From Mizuhopecten yessoensis (lineage: Eukaryota), in the NCBI RefSeq assembly GCF_002113885.1, contig NW_018405900.1, positions 1,349,392 through 1,413,391 on the forward strand: 64,000 nucleotides of DNA, in the 5' to 3' direction. Position 1 is the first letter of the stretch. Each line of letters starts with the position of its first letter. Positions 1,422 through 32,880 of the stretch are shown in pieces. A model generated the notes under the pieces. The model searched no databases. It had not been told where the DNA came from and was given only the letters and a program-made list of their open reading frames with translations. The position numbers and the translations under genes are program-made.

Positions 1422-2162
1422 GTTTGTTAACCCTTGACGTGAGCAATCTGGTATTAATATGCAGATAAGCTTGATCTTGAATAAATACTCATACCGTTGT
1501 ACTTTGGTCATACCTTTGTATACTCTGTGGTTGAGAAAATGTATGCACTTTCTTTACTTATATATATATATATATATATAAATATATGTGTGTGTATATG
1601 TTAATGAGAGGTTTAACTTAATTGCTACCATAGCTAGGTACTCGACTGGAGAGGGTAAACGGATACCGAAATGTAAACAAAGCTGTAACTTGAACTCAAA
1701 ATCGATGACAAAAGGACAAAGTATGAGAAAAGAAAGATTAATAAGGAACATGGTAGCATTGTTGCCATTAGTAGATGTTATCTCCTGTTTGGTTTGATTC
1801 TCTTTGTTCTATTGCAAGGTTCTCCGTGTAAATCTTATCTTTGTTCAACTTTTCGTTGAATGTTGAGTTCAAATTACGGTTTTGTTACAATTTAGAGTAA
1901 CTTTATAGACGGTTTGACTTAACAAGAAGTTTTTAAAGTTACCCTCTTCTAACAATCCCAACAACACCAGTGCTATTGCTTTCTTTGTAAATACCTTAGT
2001 CCTCCGATGTTTGCCGTAACTGTTTTGGTCACAGTTCTCTGTTTGAGTAGTGGCAGGATTCATAATATGTACACTTTACTCATTGATATATAAAAAAAAA
2101 AAACAATACTTTCTGAATAACCAAATTCATATGATGAAGGGTTTGTATGCACCTTCTATTGT

Positions 2163-2243
2163 GCCAATATGGATTCCTACTACTTTCGGCCCCTAGTATC
2201 ACCGATGAGCTCAAGAAGGACGAAACAGCTGTAAGGTTCAGTG
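2163..2243 (+). ncRNA. Degenerate minimal type-I hammerhead ribozyme motif, dispersed family copy 1
   Basis: ggcccctagtatca-CCGATGA-GCTC-aagaa-GGAC-GAAA-C-AGCT-G-TA-aggttc; homologous copies at about 44942-45020 (-) and 54380-54430 (-). Confidence 0.55.
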
Positions 2244-2539
2244 TAATCTAATTTTAGCACATTGTATCAATTAACAAAATGGATAGGTGCAATCACACGT
2301 GTCCTACGATCATCATTGATCAGGGTTTAACGTCACAGTGATGAATGAATTTGTTCGTTAGGTCATTTCTTGATTGAAAACGGTTTCTAGGTAATTAAAT
2401 GCATCATTAGCATCAATGAAATCAAATGTATCATTAGCATAAATTAAGATCTTGAATTACTTTGATATACTATGAAGAAGTTTTTGAAATACACTGTTTT
2501 AAAAACATGTTTTAACGATGTCACTAGTAAAATATATTC

Positions 2540-2930
2540 TAGCTGTTGGTTGTACATGGTCTAACGTCCTAACAACAGCTAAGGTCATTTCAGAACGCCT
2601 CTGTGTATGCGTTCCGGAGACGGGTTTGTTAGTGTATATGCCTCCTGGTGAAAGCGCGGATCTGACGTCAATTTTATAATGCTATTTCACTTATATACCA
2701 TGCCGAAGGCACCCAGTACAGCATTCCGACCGGTCACATTATACCTGAAACGGGTGAACCAGAATTAGCATTACCTTAAATGCCAAGCTTTAAGCACGGA
2801 ACAACAAATACCATTTTCATGGACCTTGTTATGTCCGGCTTTCGGACACAACCTATTGCCTTCCTCACCTGGCGACTGTTAAACATGAAGTTAAATGCAC
2901 GGTTTTACCTAGCAAGGCACTAGACCAAAG
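2540..2930 (-). mobile_element. tRNA-derived SINE family A (Meta/MESC-like central domain), degenerate copy
   Basis: Shares the tail aacgtcct..aacagctaaggtcattt and the body gcgcggatctga..ccgaaggcaccc..gaccggtcacattatac with the copies at 17.7 kb and 51.1 kb. Confidence 0.7.
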
Positions 2931-3531
2931 GTAGCTAGAAGTAGAGAGAAGATTTTAGATCCTGAATATTGAAATGTCCCAGGTTTTACAATGGCTATGT
3001 ATCTAAGGAGCAAACTCTGTGTTAATGCTATTTCGCGATACGATTGGGTACCTGTCTTCTTTCCAATGTAACTGTATATATACTAACTTATTTCTGAAAA
3101 CAATATTTGGTAAAGTGACACCAGTCAAGGGAAGTAACTCAATAGCCATAATGAAATCACTTTAAGTACGAAACATCAGTAAAGACAGCAAGTATTTTAC
3201 ATTGTGGCGCCAAAACAAGGATCATATATAGAATTTCAATGAAAAGATATTTTGAAATGTTCCCTGAATTTGTTAGTCAGTGTCTGTCTCTGCGCTCAGT
3301 GCTGGGCCCACCTCAACATAATAAATATCTAACGGGATTAGGGACGGTTATTATTCCTATATACATTAATACGAGGTGTGGGTTAGGGTAAGTAATACAA
3401 AGATTAGTTATGAGAGAGCGGAAAAATGTGTAAGACAATCAATGAACCTCACTTCGAGATGGCGCCGCTTGCTAAAAAAGGAAGGGAACATGATGTCTAT
3501 ACGCGACGGCACCAATAGTCACCGAAGGAGG

Positions 3532-3574
3532 TTTCCCCTGATGAACCTCAAAAGAGGTGAAACTAATAGGGAGG
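3532..3574 (+). ncRNA. Minimal type-I hammerhead ribozyme, tandem copy A (near-canonical)
   Basis: Stem I TTTCCC/GGGAGG; core CTGATGA (3538-3544); perfect stem II ACCTC-AAAA-GAGGT; GAAA; short CTAA loop; TA cleavage site (after 3568). Confidence 0.75.
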
Positions 3575-3861
3575 TACTAAGAAACTCTTGTCACACACAC
3601 ACACACACACACACATGTATCTATATACTATAAAAAACAAAACAAATCCCAACAACATGTCATTAGCGTTTTTATCTCATCAAAGATATTCTTCTGACTG
3701 GTTATTTCGAGACGAAATGACAAGGTCATAAACTACGACGTCACCTAATAGTTCGCTTTAGCGACAATGATATGTTGTTGAGATTGTTTCCTTTTTATAG
3801 TATATGTATTTGTGTGTGTGTGAATGAGAAAAATATCGATGCCAGTCTACACCGAAGGAAG

Positions 3862-3904
3862 TTTCCCCCGATGAACATCAAAGGAAGTGAAAGTACTAGG
3901 GAGG
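3862..3904 (+). ncRNA. Minimal type-I hammerhead ribozyme, tandem copy B (330 nt downstream of A)
   Basis: TTTCCC-CCGATGA-ACATC-AAAG-GAAGT-GAAA-GTAC-TA-GGGAGG; U4C variant, one stem II mismatch, palindromic GTAC loop. Confidence 0.62.
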
Positions 3905-4081
3905 TACGAAGTGACACTTGTCATTTTTTTTTTATATATTTAACCATCACAAGTATTTTGGATATTTTTCTCATTTACACACATCCATAAATATACTATA
4001 AAAAGAAATTACAAAGTCATAAAATATGACGTCACATTATACTTTGCTATCGTTATAGATAGATATAAATCATTTCACCAT

Positions 4082-4500
4082 GATGAATCCGGTAAATACG
4101 TCATTTTAGATCACAAAACTCAAGAAAAGAATCATCAGGGTGGTGTAAAATCCATGTCCATAAATGTCCAGCTACTGAGAAACGCATGTATGCCACAGGC
4201 ACATCCAGTTGTCCCGTCGAAATGTTGAGGCGATTGATAAACAAAACTGACCCAAATGCAGTTAATTTATTCAATCAGAACACCAAAGAATCTGTCCTCT
4301 ATCAAACTCATGCCCAAATCTGGTTCACTGCTTAACCGTTGAAAAAATGCAGGGCAGCGTCTATTGAAACAAAATACACACCACACTGTCTCCGAGCAAC
4401 ATCTATCCATTTTTTAAACGACAAATGTTACAAAACCAGCCATATAATGTGTATGAGTGGTCATAAAAGTGAAGCGTCACTGAGGGCAATAGGAACATGT
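4082..4500 (+). pseudogene. Decayed Crypton-type (DUF3504-like) tyrosine recombinase, C-terminal catalytic region
   Basis: Translation across a frameshift and a stop gives KNHQGG...KRMYATGTSSCPV...WFTA*P...KYTPHCLRATSI...IMCMSGHKSEASLR. This has the H-x-x-R and GH motifs of tyrosine recombinases in the Crypton/ZMYM arrangement. Confidence 0.75.
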
Positions 4501-5575
4501 CTACAACTCGAAATAAATCATAAAGTACGACACTATCGTAAGCATTTACAGTCTAACCGCGCACTTCCCTCTAAATCACAGTCGACCATTATTCAGTAGC
4601 ACGTCGTTCGTTGATGATAATGGCCGCGACAGTCACGCAGTAGCTGAATCAGCTCGATATTCCATCTAGGAACACACAGCACAAGCAGGCACAACCACAC
4701 AAATGAATCCTCAATCAACCAACAATATTACACCGGGATTCTTTGGAAATTCGACATTTACCGGCTGTAGTTTCTCTTTTAATCACATATAAAAACCTCC
4801 CGCCTGAAACCAATTTCAACTGCTTTTCCACAGGTGCAACTAACTACCGGATCGCTTCATCGTATTCCCCTCCTCACTAGCAAGCTTATATAAGCAAAAT
4901 AACCACTACCATCCAAAAATATTTTCCGTATTATGTAAGAATATTATATTATGTGAATTGCATATGTTTACTGATTAAATCGTATCGATATTTTTGTGTT
5001 TATTTCCACAAACTATTTTTTTACAGTGAAAGTCTTGACTACATTTGGAGAGCAATTCCATGAACTGTTCTACTTATTTAACAAACGCCGCGAAATGGGA
5101 ATTTAAGAGTGCGTTTTGAACTTGGAAATGCATATATTTGCATTTTGTATTGTTTTACGGCCCACCGACAATTTGAGTCTTTTAGGGCCAAACAACAATG
5201 TAAAAAATAGACATTCACAAAAAAATGAATACATAAAATCCCGAAACAAGAGGTTAAAATGTCTAAAAGTTGTCAAAATATCTCAATAGCAAACGAATTG
5301 CTTATAAAATATTTCATATCATACTAGAGAGATTAATTGAATGTAAAGAATCATCGATTGATTGCACAGAAACTGTGACGAATAAACTTTTCATTGAAGG
5401 TACACAATCTGTCACGTATTTGTTTGATATCAGCGCAGTCAATCATAAAGTGTTTGACTGTAATTGGTTGATCGCACGCATGACAATAAGGTTGTTCTTC
5501 CATTTGTAAAATGTAGCTATGTGTGATGTAGGTTTTGCCTATGCGTGATCGCGAGAGGACAATTTCCTCTCTGCG

Positions 5576-18256: not shown

Positions 18257-18712
18257 TCTTAGCTATCTTTTCGAAATACTATTCATTACGATTATTTCTA
18301 TGTATTGTAAGCTAAAGTTATAATAAATTTATAAATATTTACCAATAACTGTTTATAACCTTTCAAAATATTTGACCCGTCATCCTCGATTTCGTTGATA
18401 TTGTGACGTCATTGTTTGAAGTAATTACTTTACTCGACATCAATAATTATAACTACCAACCACCAATTACATCTATTTGAAAAGTGATTGTTAACATCAA
18501 GCAAAAATGGAATATCAAGGTTTTAGCATTATTTTTTGTTGTTTTGTTTGTATCTCTTTAGATTAAACAAGCAAATAGAAGAAAGGACATACATTCTCTG
18601 TCTGATTACATTGAGGAAATCAAGAATACACGTGTTGTGTCCCACTACATATCGTAAAAGGCGACTAATGTGGGGCTGCAGAATCGGGAGTTCTCTTCTG
18701 TGTCCTCTACAA

Positions 18713-21465
18713 AGGGGACATAGAAGGGGACATGGAAGGGGACATAGAAGGGGACATAGAAAGGGACATAGAAAGGGACATGGAAGGGGACATAGAAGGG
18801 GACATAGAAGGGGACATAGAAGGGGACATAGAAAGGGTCATGGAAGGGGACATGGAAGGAAGGGGACATAGAAGGGGGCATAGAAGAGGACATGGAAAGG
18901 GACATAGAAAGGGATATGGAAGGGGACATAGAAGAGGCCATGGAAGGGGACATAGAAGAGGACATGGAAGGGGGCATAGAAGAGGATATGGAAGGGGACA
19001 TAGAAGAGGATATGGAAGGGGACATAGAAGGGGACATGGAAGGGGGCATAGAAGAGGACATGGAAAGGGACATAGAAAGGGACATAGAAAGGGTCATGGA
19101 AGGGGACATGGAAGGGGACAAGGAAGGGGACATAGAAAGAGACACGGAAGGGGGCATAGAAGAGGACATGGAAAGGTACATAGAAAGGGACATAGGAAGG
19201 GACATAGAAAGGGACATGGAATGGGACATAGAAGGGGACATAGAAGGGGACATAGAAGGGGGCATAGAAGAGGACATGGAAGGGGGCATAGAAGAGGACA
19301 TGGAAAGGTACATAGAAAGGGACATAGGAAGGGACATAGAAAGGGACATAGATAGGGACATGGAAGGGGACATGGAAGAGGCCATGGAAGGGGACATAGA
19401 AGAGGACATGGAAAGGGACATAAAAAGGGACATAGAAAGGGACATAGATAGGGACATGGAAGGGGACATGGAAGAGGACATGGAAGGGCACATAGAAGAG
19501 GATATGGAAGGGGACATAGAAGGGGACCTGGAAGGGGGCATAGAAGAGGACATGGACATAGAAGGGGACATGGAAGGGGACATAGACGGGGACATGGAAG
19601 GGGACATGGATAGAAAGGGACATAGAAAGGGATATGGAAGGGGACATGGAAGGGGAGATAGAAAGGGACATTGAAGGGGACATAGAAGAGGACATGGACA
19701 GAGACATAGAAAGGGACATAGAAAGAGACATGGAAGGGGACATGGAAGGAAGGGGACATAGAAGGGGACATGGAAAGGGACATGGAAGGGGACATGGACG
19801 GGGACATAGAAAGGGACATGGAATGGGACATAGAAGGGGACATAGAAAAGGACATGGAAAGGGACATAGAAAGGGGCATAGAAAGGGACATGGAAGGGGC
19901 CATGGAAGGGGACATAGAAGAGGGCATGGAAGGGGACATGGAAGGGGACATATAAAGGGACATGGAAGGGGACATAGAATGGGACATAGAAAGGGACATA
20001 GAAGGGGACATGGAAGGGGACATAGACGGGGACATGGAAGGGGACATGGAAGAGGACATAGAAGAGGACATGGAAAGCGACATAGAAAGGGACATGGAAG
20101 GACATAGAAAGGGACATGGAAGAGGACATAGAAGAGGACAATGGAGTGGGACATGGAAGGGGACATAGAATGGGACATAGAAAGGGACATGGAATGGGAC
20201 ATAGAAGGGGACATAGAAGGGGACATAGAAGGGGGCATAGAAGAGGACATGGAAGGGGGCATAGAAGAGGACATGGAAAGGTACATAGAAAGGGACATAG
20301 GAAGGGACATAGAAAGGGACATGGAAGAGGACATAGAAGAGGACAATGGAATGGGACATGGAAGGCGACATAGAAGAGGACATGGAAGGGGGCATAGAAG
20401 TGGACATGGAAGGGGACATAGAAAAGGACATGGAAAGGGACATAGAAGGGGACATGGAAGGGGACATCGAAGGGGACATGGAAGGGGACATAGACGGGGA
20501 CATGGAAGGGGACATGGATAGAAAGGGACATAGAAAGGGATATGGAAGGGGACATGGAAGGGGACAAGGAAGGGGACATAGAAAGAGACACGGAAGGGGG
20601 CATAGAAGAGGACATGTAAAGGGACATAGAAAGGGACATATAAAGGGACATGGAAGGGGACATAGAATGGGACATAGAAAGGGACATAGAAGGGGACATA
20701 GAAGGGGTCATGGAAGGGGACATAGAAAGGGACATGGGGGACATAGAAAGGGACATGGAATGGGACATAGAAGGGGACATAGAAAAGGACATGGAAAGGG
20801 ACATAGAAGGGGACATAGAAGAGGACATGGACAGAGACATAGAAAGGGACATAGAAAGGAACATGGAAGGGGACATGGAAGGGACCTAGAAGAGGACATG
20901 GAAAGGGACATAGAAAGGGGCATAGAAAGGGACATGGAAGGGGGCATAGAAGAGGACATGGACATAGAAGGGGACATGGAAGGGGACATAGAGGAGGACA
21001 TGGAAGGGGACATGGAAGGTGAGATAGAAAGGGACATGGAAGGGGACAGGGAAGGGGACATAGAAAGGGACATCGAAGGGGACATGGAAGGGGACATCGA
21101 AGGGGACATGGAAGGGGACATAGAACGGGACATGGAAGGCGACATAGAAGAGGACATGGAAGGGGGCATAGAAGAGGAGATGGAAAGGGACATAGAAAGG
21201 GACTTAGAAAGGGACATAGAAAGGGACATAGAAAGGGATATGGAAGGGGACATGGAAGGGGACATAGACGGGGACATGGAAGGGGACATGGAAGAGGACA
21301 TAGAAGAGGACAATGGAGTGGGACATGGAAGGGGACATAGAATGGGACATAGAAAGGGACATAGAAAGAGACATGGAAGGGGACATAGAAAGGGACATGG
21401 AAGGGGACATAGAAGAGGACATGGAAGGGGACATAGAAGGGGACATGGAAGGGGACATAGAAGAG
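18713..21465 (+). repeat. About 2.75-kb purine-rich 12-bp minisatellite (GGGGACATAGAA/GGGGACATGGAA variants)
   Basis: Directly visible; produces the spurious MEGDIE/GHRR/MSPS/VPFY/CPL ORFs. Confidence 0.97.
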
Positions 21466-22442
21466 ACCAAAATGGATCGCCTCCCCCCTTGAGATCCTTT
21501 CCGGTTCCTGTTTACTGCCTTTTTTTCTAACTGCATTCTGTTTCAGACGGTGTCTCCCAAGGCACCGTCCTCTTGTGACCTTGGATGATGCAAGGACGCT
21601 AAACCGCAAAAAAACACTTCCTGAACCCATGAACACATACTTATCATGCTTCGACTTTGATTTTGTGCTCAACTTGTCAAGCGTAAACATAACATAGAAT
21701 ACTGCATTCAGCTTATAGTCTCTCTAAATTCTTTAGAATCATTGACAATATGTGATTTTATGTAATTTATCAGGAAAAGAATAAAGACCTGAACAAATCA
21801 TTTTGCGTTGCTAGTTCAACGGTTTCAACCAGCTAATGCTGAAAGGAGAACGGCAGGCTCAGATATGAACCGAGAGTGACATCTAGAAAATTTGACACAT
21901 GTTCATCGACGGGGCGAGACGTGCCTGACCGAAATTAAAATGCTGAAAATCACTAGTTTACATTTTTTCCTCTTGTAAAACACGGTCGATTCACCTGTAT
22001 ATCTTACGACATCATCTAAAATCAAGTTTCAACAGAGATATTCAAAAGTGATCAAAGTTTGAGCATGAGGAGGTGTTCATTAATACCGGGCCAAGAGTTT
22101 TTTTGTATCTAATGTCATTTTGGAACTTCATAATAATAGACAAAAACAAATGCATTTCCGAATTTTATTTCATTGAAAGCCATGTGAACGAAAGCGTTGG
22201 AGCAAAACTGACGAAATTTAAACATTTAATGAATCCGTTCCATATCCCCTCATTATTTCATTTCACGGCCCGATGACTGCATCGTTTGTCGTACAGTTTC
22301 CTACTCGGGTGTTCATTGAATATTCTTTGAATAATTTCACTTTCAGTTTCCTTATTTGTGGCCGACATCTAATCGCTAGTCACAGCGATAGATCTTCTGC
22401 TTGCCGAGCTTCTTCAATATTTTTCTTTTGCTCATAGCATTT

Positions 22443-32064: not shown

Positions 32065-32880
32065 TACACAAAAATATCAACTGGGTTTTTCAGGGTAAAA
32101 ATGCGAATGGACCTGACAAGGATTCGAACCCTGGACCTCAAATTATTATACCACCGATATATATACATATATACATAACCTGAGTTATCTGGTCACTGAT
32201 ATATATATACAATAAAAACATTTTTTTCAGATCGTCCGCTAGGCCTTTCTGCCTTCTAGGGCTTCTTCAGGCGGATTGATGTTTATTTATCACCGTTGGT
32301 TACATGACGTCATCAATATTTGTATAGTCAACAATTTTAGTGACGTCATAAATAAACAAATAAATGGTACGTGTATATATGTAACAGAGGAAAAATTTAG
32401 TATATATATTATTATACCACCGATATATATACATATATACATAACCTGAGTTATCTGGTCACCGATATATATATATATATATATACATGTATACATATAT
32501 CTAAATTAATATATATGTACATAATATAACCGGAGTTATCTGGTCACTGATATATATATATATATATATATATTTATAACCTGAGTTATATGGTCACCGA
32601 TTTATATACATATATATATATAACCTGAGTTATCTGGTCCACGTTATTGCATTGACCCAGTCGCGCTGCACTAAACCGAAATTAAGGGGAGATTACTCTA
32701 TGTACAAACAACTACATTGGAATTTTACTAATGTTATCCCCACAGTGGGACAGGGGCGTTGACTTACGTCATGTTTACGTACCCTAATTACACTGGTGTG
32801 GCGGTAACATACGTCACGTGTAAGTGTTTGCGTTGTGTTGTTTTTCCTCTGTTACATATATACACGTACCATTTATCTCT
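32065..32880 (-). mobile_element. Composite repeat: tRNA-like head fragments, repeated (aacctgagttatctggtcac+(AT)n) units and a hammerhead
   Basis: ggattcgaaccctggacc (B-box) at about 32120; a related head at 63628-63725; inverted duplicate of about 32360-32395 at about 32842-32876. Confidence 0.45.
32235..32275 (-). ncRNA. Minimal type-I hammerhead ribozyme motif (near-intact)
   Basis: Minus strand TCCGC-CTGAAGA-AGCC-ctagaa-GGCA-GAAA-GGCC-TA-GCGGA; perfect 5-bp stem I, palindromic GGCC loop, one mismatch at the stem II closing pair. Confidence 0.65.

What the first reader, a model, noticed from the sequence alone, without database searches (positions are those of the whole stretch)
3480..4055. 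Tandem hammerhead ribozymes exactly 330 nt apart: retrozyme-like unit able in principle to release a small (circular) RNA
Seen: two homologous motifs at 3532-3574 and 3862-3904, each with stem I (TTTCCC/GGGAGG), a CUGAUGA-type box, 5-bp stem II, GAAA, a 4-nt loop (CTAA, GTAC) and a UA cleavage site. Flanking sequence is also duplicated (tatactataaaaa..gtcataaa..gacgtcac), so the region is a diverged dimer. There is no coding capacity between them. Established: minimal type-I hammerheads with palindromic loops occur in tandem in Penelope-like terminal repeats and non-LTR retrozymes, and they cleave as dimers. Inference: double cleavage (after 3568 and 3898) would excise a 330-nt monomer, so this may be an undescribed retrozyme family.
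Basis: partly seen in the sequence, partly recalled or inferred. Interest (0 to 1): 0.8.

Follow-up and report, generated by a model that had tools for sequence, protein, structure and literature searches.

The report
Decayed Penelope-element hammerhead pair, locally duplicated
The two hammerhead-ribozyme motifs are real, but they are worn-out tail ends of a common Penelope-like jumping gene, copied side by side within a nest of repeat fragments; they are not a new family of ribozyme-released small RNAs.

Summary
A 74-nt direct repeat (3520-3593 and 3850-3923, 85% identical, 330 nt apart) carries a minimal type-I hammerhead in each copy.

The motif belongs to a genome-wide family: at least 309 core matches against 0 for the reversed-pattern control. 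This family forms the fixed 3' end of a 5'-truncated retroelement. Longer copies of that element encode a decayed GIY-YIG endonuclease just upstream, which marks it as a Penelope-like element (PLE). Minimal, dimer-dependent hammerheads in PLE terminal regions have been described since 2014.

The 330-nt "monomer" is not a repeat family. Its 12-nt leader plus core occurs only here and in a 97.4% identical segmental duplicate 16.6 kb upstream, where the spacing is 322 nt. The interval consists of an antisense and an inverted fragment of a second, very abundant short element with its own hammerhead-like relic. That explains the duplicated flanks and the long hairpin.

Both window copies are damaged. 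HHR1 has lost the self-complementary loop needed for dimer cleavage. HHR2 has C in place of U4 and an A.A mismatch in stem II.

The best reading is an old local duplication inside a nest of PLE 3'-end fragments, probably inert. Earlier first-stage notes of this scan flagged Penelope-type hammerheads elsewhere in this genome. This is an ordinary finding of low interest.

The parts
3520..3593 (+). Hammerhead unit A. It has a 12-nt locus-specific leader (3520-3531), HHR1 (3532-3574, cleavage site after 3568) and the start of the PLE 3' tail, which is cut off at the (CA)n tract.
   Evidence: custom covariance model, 79.7 bits. The leader plus core is found only here and in the duplicate.
3592..3615 (.). 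(CA)12 microsatellite directly after unit A. It replaces the 53-nt tail that unit B still has.
   Evidence: Its length differs in the duplicate locus, giving 322 rather than 330 nt spacing.
3613..3765 (-). 5'-truncated copy of a second abundant short element ('fam2'), antisense to the hammerheads. Its own hammerhead-like core (about 3650-3700 on the minus strand) is decayed.
   Evidence: 72-82% identity to many dispersed copies, 880 first-look candidates.
3766..3837 (+). Plus-oriented 3'-end fragment of fam2, joined head to head with the previous part. It forms the inverted repeats I1 and I2.
   Evidence: This junction explains the long hairpin of the 330-nt interval (z = -7.3).
3850..3960 (+). 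Hammerhead unit B. It has the same 12-nt leader, HHR2 (3862-3904, site after 3898, U4 to C, A.A mismatch in stem II) and a longer PLE 3' tail.
   Evidence: 71.1 bits.
3961..4050 (-). Second antisense fam2 fragment, with an internal deletion. It is the counterpart of 3613-3765 in the duplicated unit.

Best explanation
The region is a nest of retrotransposon debris. Each hammerhead is the extreme 3'-terminal piece of a severely 5'-truncated Penelope-like element (PLE) with a C-terminal GIY-YIG endonuclease. These elements carry a minimal type-I hammerhead about 65-90 nt from their 3' end. One such fragment inserted next to fragments of a second short hammerhead-like element, which lie in antisense and head-to-head orientation at CA/TA microsatellites. 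A DNA-level tandem duplication of roughly 330 nt then copied the composite about 1.6 times. The two copies have since diverged by about 15%. Later, a segmental duplication of at least 3 kb copied the whole locus. In an active PLE the hammerhead is thought to act as a dimer: the self-complementary A-NNNN-U hexamers of two copies pair to build helix III, and the RNA of tandem or pseudo-LTR arrangements is cut after UA. Here that capacity is probably lost, because HHR1 lacks the self-complementary hexamer and HHR2 has a core change and a weakened stem II. What is shown: the family membership, the link to PLE, the composition of the spacer, and the uniqueness of the unit. What is inferred: the order of events and the loss of activity.
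For: The family is large: at least 72 matches to the 74-nt unit and 309 core matches against 0 for the control.

In most copies homology is confined to about 75-140 nt around the core, often with (TA)n flanks, and head-to-head pairs and short tandem arrays occur.

In loci L062-L080 the homology starts at variable upstream points and stops at a fixed 3' end just past the hammerhead, which is the pattern of 5' truncation.

Translations just upstream show a C-x4-C-x2-C linker and a VVY...YIGQT endonuclease remnant. One such copy overlaps a Pfam GIY-YIG match above cut-off, at C70816. The remnant matches many intact open frames of 800-1350 aa at 53-60% identity, E about 1e-25, at the same places as Pfam GIY-YIG matches. 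Its nearest Atlas clusters are eukaryotic GIY-YIG clusters.

The spacer is fam2 in antisense plus an inverted 3' piece. The leader plus core is unique to this locus and its duplicate. Fam2 lies near this hammerhead in only 2 of 45 other loci.

An undamaged family copy is predicted to form the domain-swapped double hammerhead as a homodimer; HHR1 and HHR2 are not.

The literature describes PLE pseudo-LTRs with minimal hammerheads, mostly seen as single truncated copies, inactive as monomers and weakly active as dimers (PMC4209133). It also describes hammerheads near PLE 3' ends, adjacent inverted 5'-truncated copies, and microsatellite targets (PMC8557442).
Against: No PLE coding sequence lies next to the hammerheads in the window itself, so the link rests on homologous copies elsewhere.

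There is no compensatory variation within the family: 91% of cells are paired, but the covariation score equals that of shuffles. The hammerhead fold therefore rests on the motif and on comparison with a second family.

Loss of activity is inferred from sequence and a thermodynamic prediction, not measured. HHR1's catalytic core is intact.

The duplicated unit contains two elements in opposite orientation. A transcribed composite copied through RNA would also produce that arrangement.
Confidence: 0.8

Rival explanations
1. One reading: a working retrozyme-like dimer. The locus is transcribed, both hammerheads cut (after 3568 and 3898), and a rod-like RNA of about 330 nt is released and possibly circularised.
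For: Two same-strand hammerhead motifs lie 330 nt apart, and HHR1 has an intact core. The excised segment folds into a very stable long hairpin (-93.9 kcal/mol, z = -7.3), as retrozyme RNAs do. Mussel retrozymes are 350-390 nt (PMC7229834), and animal retrozymes are thought to derive from PLE pseudo-LTRs (bioRxiv 10.64898/2026.07.22.740005). True tandem arrays of this same hammerhead exist elsewhere in the genome.
Against: The unit is not a family: it occurs at one locus plus its segmental duplicate. The hairpin is explained by inverted fam2 fragments. HHR2 has U4 changed to C and a stem II mismatch. HHR1's hexamer cannot self-pair, and it pairs with HHR2's at only 4 of 6 positions (sequence). 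PLE-type minimal hammerheads show no monomer activity and only low dimer activity even when intact (PMC4209133).
Confidence: 0.07
2. The tandem pair arose during PLE integration itself, as a pseudo-LTR-like partial tandem made by template switching. On this view it is not a later DNA-level duplication.
For: PLEs typically insert as partial tandems with adjacent inverted 5'-truncated copies and short 'tails' (PMC8557442). Head-to-head and tandem hammerhead fragments are common at other loci.
Against: The duplicated unit includes a 12-nt leader absent from every other family copy, together with an antisense fragment of a different element. This is what a duplication of already-inserted DNA would give. 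The sequence upstream of HHR2 does not match the PLE body.
Confidence: 0.12
3. The motifs are chance look-alikes and not hammerhead-derived at all.
For: Rfam finds nothing at gathering score. There is no covariation within the family.
Against: There are 309 copies against 0 in the control. All core positions are at least 90% conserved across 51 copies. A second family in the same window (32210-32286, minus strand) has the same architecture, with every helix and the loop palindrome changed in a paired way. The family is linked to PLE endonuclease remnants. Intact copies also escape the Rfam models.
Confidence: 0.01

Closest known systems
Minimal hammerheads of Penelope-like element pseudo-LTRs and 3' regions (Cervera & de la Pena 2014, PMC4209133; Craig et al. 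2021, PMC8557442)
   Same: They share the type-I topology with a short helix I (5-7 bp), a helix II of 4-5 bp with an A next to position 9, and a 1-bp helix III capped by a 4-nt loop that makes a 6-nt palindrome. They also share the position near the element's 3' end, the mostly solitary truncated copies, the inverted and tandem arrangements, the microsatellite flanks, and the GIY-YIG endonuclease upstream in longer copies.
   Different: The window copies lack any coding part, and each carries a damaging change. The 10.1-11.1 pair is A-U or A.A rather than the usual G-C. The specific family of this genome is, as far as my searches show, not described by name.
Metazoan non-LTR retrozymes, e.g. 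the mussel 350-390-nt repeats (Cervera & de la Pena 2020, PMC7229834)
   Same: Both have same-strand type-I hammerheads a few hundred nt apart, low GC content and a strongly folded interval.
   Different: Retrozymes are families of many tandem multimers with a conserved monomer and abundant circRNA. Here there is one locus (plus its duplicate), about 1.6 units, a spacer made of foreign element fragments, and decayed ribozymes.
Hammerhead-bearing satellites and SINE-like repeats (newt satellite 2, Schistosoma Sm-alpha; reviewed in PMC6155905)
   Same: Both are dispersed or tandem short repeats that carry a type-I hammerhead and depend on two copies for cleavage.
   Different: Those repeats are transcribed and cleave measurably. 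This locus has not been shown to do either.

Membership tests
Hammerhead ribozyme, type I, minimal (PLE type) | Conserved core: C3 U4 G5 A6 N7 G8 A9, then G12 A13 A14 A15.1, then U16.1 H17 at the cleavage site | tested here: inconclusive
   HHR1 has every core position. HHR2 has C at position 4. Across 51 family copies the core columns are at least 90% conserved.
Hammerhead ribozyme, type I, minimal (PLE type) | Helices I and II base-paired around the core, with open ends at helix I | tested here: met
   HHR1 has a stem I of 6-7 bp (with G.U pairs) and a stem II of 5 bp. HHR2's stem II has one A.A mismatch. Across the family 91% of cells are paired, against 38-55% for slid controls, but there is no compensatory change within the family. 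Paired changes are seen against the second family at 32210-32286.
Hammerhead ribozyme, type I, minimal (PLE type) | Self-complementary helix III and loop hexamer that allows the dimeric active form | tested here: inconclusive
   The family form AGCGCU and HHR2's AGUACU are palindromes. HHR1's ACUAAU is not. Across the family 86% of cells are paired, and 12 of 500 shuffles reach that value. The cofold prediction forms the double hammerhead only for the intact family copy.
Hammerhead ribozyme, type I, minimal (PLE type) | Match to a curated Rfam hammerhead model at gathering score | tested here: not met
   There is no hit at gathering score. The best match is Hammerhead_3 at 23.2 bits against a threshold of 48.5. 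An undamaged family copy also fails (HH9, 13.8 bits), so the models do not cover this minimal type.
Hammerhead ribozyme, type I, minimal (PLE type) | Self-cleavage at the UA site | not testable with these tools
   This needs in vitro transcription of monomer and dimer constructs.
Penelope-like element (C-terminal GIY-YIG EN+), 3' terminal region | Physical linkage of the motif to a PLE ORF (RT plus GIY-YIG endonuclease) | tested here: met
   This is met for the family but not for the window copies. Decayed endonuclease remnants lie about 200-250 nt upstream of the hammerhead in L062-L080. They overlap a Pfam GIY-YIG match above cut-off and match intact 800-1350-aa frames at E about 1e-25. Atlas GIY-YIG clusters are the nearest. 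The RT part was not examined.
Penelope-like element (C-terminal GIY-YIG EN+), 3' terminal region | Variable 5' truncation with a fixed 3' end; inverted and tandem complex insertions; microsatellite targets | tested here: met
   In the window: the head-to-head junction at 3765/3766 and the (CA)n/(TG)n flanks.
Non-LTR retrozyme | A conserved monomer (150-450 nt) present as tandem multimers at many loci | tested here: not met
   The whole unit occurs only at C2573:1352911 and in its duplicate at C2573:1336339, plus a 241-nt contig. TRF sees no 330-nt array.
Non-LTR retrozyme | Expression as linear and circular RNA of monomer length | not testable with these tools

The most novel reading that the evidence does not exclude
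A DNA-level duplication of a PLE 3'-end fragment plus an inverted pair of another element has created a new two-ribozyme unit. This unit is still transcribed and releases a rod-like RNA of 322-330 nt, which would make it a retrozyme caught at birth, before any amplification.
Probability: 0.04. Interest if true: 0.5.

Novelty: new member of a known kind. Interest (0 to 1): 0.15.

Why it matters
It matters little beyond annotation. It adds one more invertebrate genome in which Penelope-like elements scatter hundreds of minimal hammerheads, and it shows how such fragments pile up at microsatellites and can be mistaken for retrozyme dimers. The useful by-products lie outside the finding. The same hammerhead has formed genuine short satellites (41-, 51-, 91- and about 103-nt periods) elsewhere in this genome. 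An abundant short element also carries a collapsed hammerhead-like core. Together these could serve anyone studying how PLE terminal regions give rise to retrozymes.

Tried and rejected
- **Rfam.** I ran it at gathering score and at permissive thresholds. It is uninformative for this minimal type. The microRNA-precursor matches over 3580-3837 only reflect the inverted repeat.
- **Type-III reading.** The Rfam Hammerhead_3 alignment (3513-3568) was rejected because its helix III partner lies outside the conserved repeat and is absent from copy 2.
- **Covariation within the family.** There is none, as expected for neutral decay of a single family.
- **Full PLE near one long copy.** I found no ORF of 120 aa or more in 10 kb. 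The extended search was swamped by fam2.
- **Pfam on single decayed endonuclease translations.** The result was weak (GIY-YIG E = 0.062). The link was made instead through the genome-wide family and protein searches.
- **Fetching an intact PLE copy.** I did not try another route.
- **Pfam on the ORF pieces downstream of the finding.** This gave only a weak Phage_integrase hint.
- **One mistyped structure string and one over-long pattern** were corrected and re-sent.
- **Species identity.** The assembly size and contig count remind me of a scallop assembly, but that is memory only and was not tested.

Full report
**Observation**

The repeat finder reports a 74-nt direct repeat, 3520-3593 and 3850-3923, 85% identical, with a start-to-start spacing of 330 nt. 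It also reports two further duplicated blocks downstream of each copy: 3609-3636 with 3977-4004, and 3714-3757 with 4005-4048.

HHR1 reads as follows: stem I 3532-3537 pairing with 3569-3574, CUGAUGA, stem II ACCUC/GAGGU with an AAAA loop, GAAA, a CUAA loop, and UA with the scissile bond after 3568. HHR2 is in register 330 nt downstream. However, its box is CCGAUGA, its stem II has an A.A mismatch, and its loop is GUAC.

The Rfam result says little. Nothing reaches gathering score in the window. At a permissive threshold only a 23.2-bit Hammerhead_3 alignment appears, and it uses flanking bases that the second copy does not share. An undamaged relative from elsewhere in the genome also fails Rfam (13.8 bits), so these models do not cover this minimal type.

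**The motif is a large genomic family**

The window is part of a 988-Mb assembly of 82,659 contigs, clearly eukaryotic. The 74-nt unit finds at least 72 matches. A 35-nt core pattern with up to 3 mismatches finds 309 places, against 0 for the reversed control.

In 51 aligned copies all core positions are at least 90% conserved. The common form has a 5-bp stem I, CUGAUGA, A-CCUC/GAGG-U (or A), GAAA, and a GCGC loop followed by UA, so that A-GCGC-U is a 6-nt palindrome.

Within the family the helices are 91% paired, against 38-55% for slid controls, but there is no compensatory change. This is what neutral decay of one family would give.

Support for the fold comes from a second family found with my covariance model at 32210-32286 on the minus strand (29.5 bits, E = 6e-5). 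It has the same architecture with stem I UCCGC/GCGGA, stem II GCC/GGC and the palindrome AGGCCU, so every helix is changed in a paired way.

**The family is the 3' end of a Penelope-like element**

Around most copies homology is confined to about 75-140 nt, beginning a few bases before stem I. The flanks are often (TA)n, and head-to-head pairs occur.

A subset extends upstream. Searching with that extension recovered loci L062-L080. In these loci homology begins at variable points and ends at a fixed 3' end about 65-90 nt past the core, the signature of 5'-truncated retroposition.

Translations of the shared upstream part show a C-x4-C-x2-C linker followed by a VVY...C..C..YIGQT...H endonuclease remnant. 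Four results tie this remnant to the GIY-YIG family:
- One such copy coincides with a Pfam GIY-YIG match above cut-off, at C70816.
- The remnant matches more than 100 places at 53-60% identity, E about 1e-25.
- Many of those places lie in open frames of 800-1350 aa and coincide with Pfam GIY-YIG matches.
- Its nearest Atlas clusters are eukaryotic GIY-YIG clusters.

A C-terminal GIY-YIG endonuclease with that linker, a canonical hammerhead near the 3' end, inverted 5'-truncated neighbours and microsatellite flanks together match the published description of EN+ PLEs (PMC8557442). Minimal hammerheads in PLE pseudo-LTRs were described in 2014. They are mostly seen as single truncated copies, are inactive as monomers and are weakly active as dimers (PMC4209133).

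**What lies between and after the two hammerheads**

The interval 3613-3765 belongs to a different, very abundant short element that I call fam2 (880 first-look candidates). It lies antisense to the hammerheads.

In its own sense strand fam2 ends in (TA)n and carries, near its 3' end, a hammerhead-like core: CUGAAGA, stem II AUCUC/GAGAU, GAAA, GUAC, UA. Its stem I appears collapsed. The window copy of that core is decayed.

Segment 3766-3837 is a plus-oriented 3'-end piece of fam2, joined head to head with the antisense copy. Segment 3961-4050 is another antisense fam2 fragment.

This accounts for three features of the region:
- the inverted repeats I1 and I2;
- the very stable hairpin of the 330-nt segment (-93.9 kcal/mol, z = -7.3), together with the spurious microRNA-precursor matches.

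Fam2 is not a regular companion of this hammerhead. Only 2 of 45 other hammerhead loci have it within 1.5 kb. Similar mixed nests do occur, for example in L054.

**The 330-nt unit is not a repeat family**

The 12-nt leader that precedes both hammerheads, together with the core, occurs four times in the genome. Two are the window copies, and two lie in a duplicate of the locus 16.6 kb upstream.

That duplicate is 97.4% identical over at least 3 kb, and its two hammerheads are 322 nt apart because the (CA)n tract is shorter.

Searches with the interval and with the downstream block found the entire unit nowhere else, apart from a 241-nt contig. TRF sees no 330-nt array.

The two units are about 15% diverged and differ by indels. 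Unit A has (CA)n where unit B keeps a 53-nt PLE tail, and unit A has 77 nt of fam2 that unit B lacks.

The simplest history has three steps. PLE and fam2 fragments inserted at microsatellites. A tandem DNA duplication of about 1.6 units followed. Much later, a segmental duplication copied the locus.

**Likely activity**

For this class helix III is a single A-U pair. Cleavage depends on two copies pairing through the self-complementary hexamer (PMC4209133; PMC6155905).

An undamaged family copy is predicted to form exactly that domain-swapped double hammerhead as a homodimer. HHR1 is not, because ACUAAU cannot self-pair. HHR2 is not either, because its stem II is not formed in the minimum-energy fold. 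The two hexamers pair with each other at only 4 of 6 positions.

HHR2 also has C at position 4. From my own knowledge of hammerhead mutagenesis this position is sensitive to change; I did not test that here. I therefore consider double cleavage and release of a 330-nt RNA unlikely, but this remains an inference.

**Comparison and verdict**

The thing works like, and is a member of, the PLE minimal-hammerhead class. It fails the defining test for a retrozyme family, which is a conserved monomer present as multimers at many loci. Animal retrozymes are themselves thought to derive from PLE pseudo-LTRs (bioRxiv 10.64898/2026.07.22.740005), and mussel retrozymes are 350-390 nt (PMC7229834).

Two unchecked first-stage notes of this scan report Penelope-type hammerheads on other pieces of this genome. 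They agree with this reading but do not add support to it.

No consensus of the element beyond the aligner's automatic line for the 76-nt motif was built or used.

Noticed in passing
window 32210-32286 (-): A third PLE-type minimal hammerhead, from a different family: stem I UCCGC/GCGGA, CUGAAGA, stem II GCC/GGC, GAAA, and an AGGCCU palindrome followed by UA (29.5 bits with model R1, E = 6e-5). A 5'-truncated relative sits in L054.
   Followed up: partly
window 2194-2243 (+): A weaker hammerhead-like motif with a CCGAUGA box, GAAAC and an ACAGCUGU palindrome. Its stems pair poorly. It may be a decayed PLE hammerhead of yet another family.
   Followed up: no
L027 (G000:C5180:577571-580625), array about 1191-2971; core matches continue to C5180:584681: The same hammerhead has become a satellite with periods of 35, 51, 86 and 101-103 nt, so that each 51-nt unit is essentially one minimal hammerhead. 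Further arrays lie at C4995:1157938-1158136 (41-nt spacing) and in L022 at 1485-1745 (91 nt x 2.9).
   Followed up: partly
window 3613-3765, 3766-3837, 3961-4050; L086-L093: An abundant short element ('fam2', about 240-350 nt, 880 first-look candidates). It ends in (TA)n, contains TGACGTCA palindromes, often occurs as inverted pairs, and has a hammerhead-like core near its 3' end whose stem I seems collapsed. It may be a non-autonomous PLE-dependent element.
   Followed up: partly
window 2020-5093 versus G000:C2573:1334839-1337912 (L002): A segmental duplication of at least 3 kb at 97.4% identity, 16.6 kb apart on the same contig. Its full extent was not measured.
   Followed up: partly
window 4067-4599 (+): Decayed ORF pieces just downstream of the finding. 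One reads ..GKYVILDHKTQEKNHQGG.., and the 4339-4599 ORF has a weak Phage_integrase match (E = 0.033). This may be a relic of a tyrosine-recombinase (Crypton-like) element.
   Followed up: no
window 18645-21690: A strongly GC- and AT-skewed stretch (GC skew about +0.45) with overlapping long ORFs on both strands (up to 950 aa). It was not examined.
   Followed up: no
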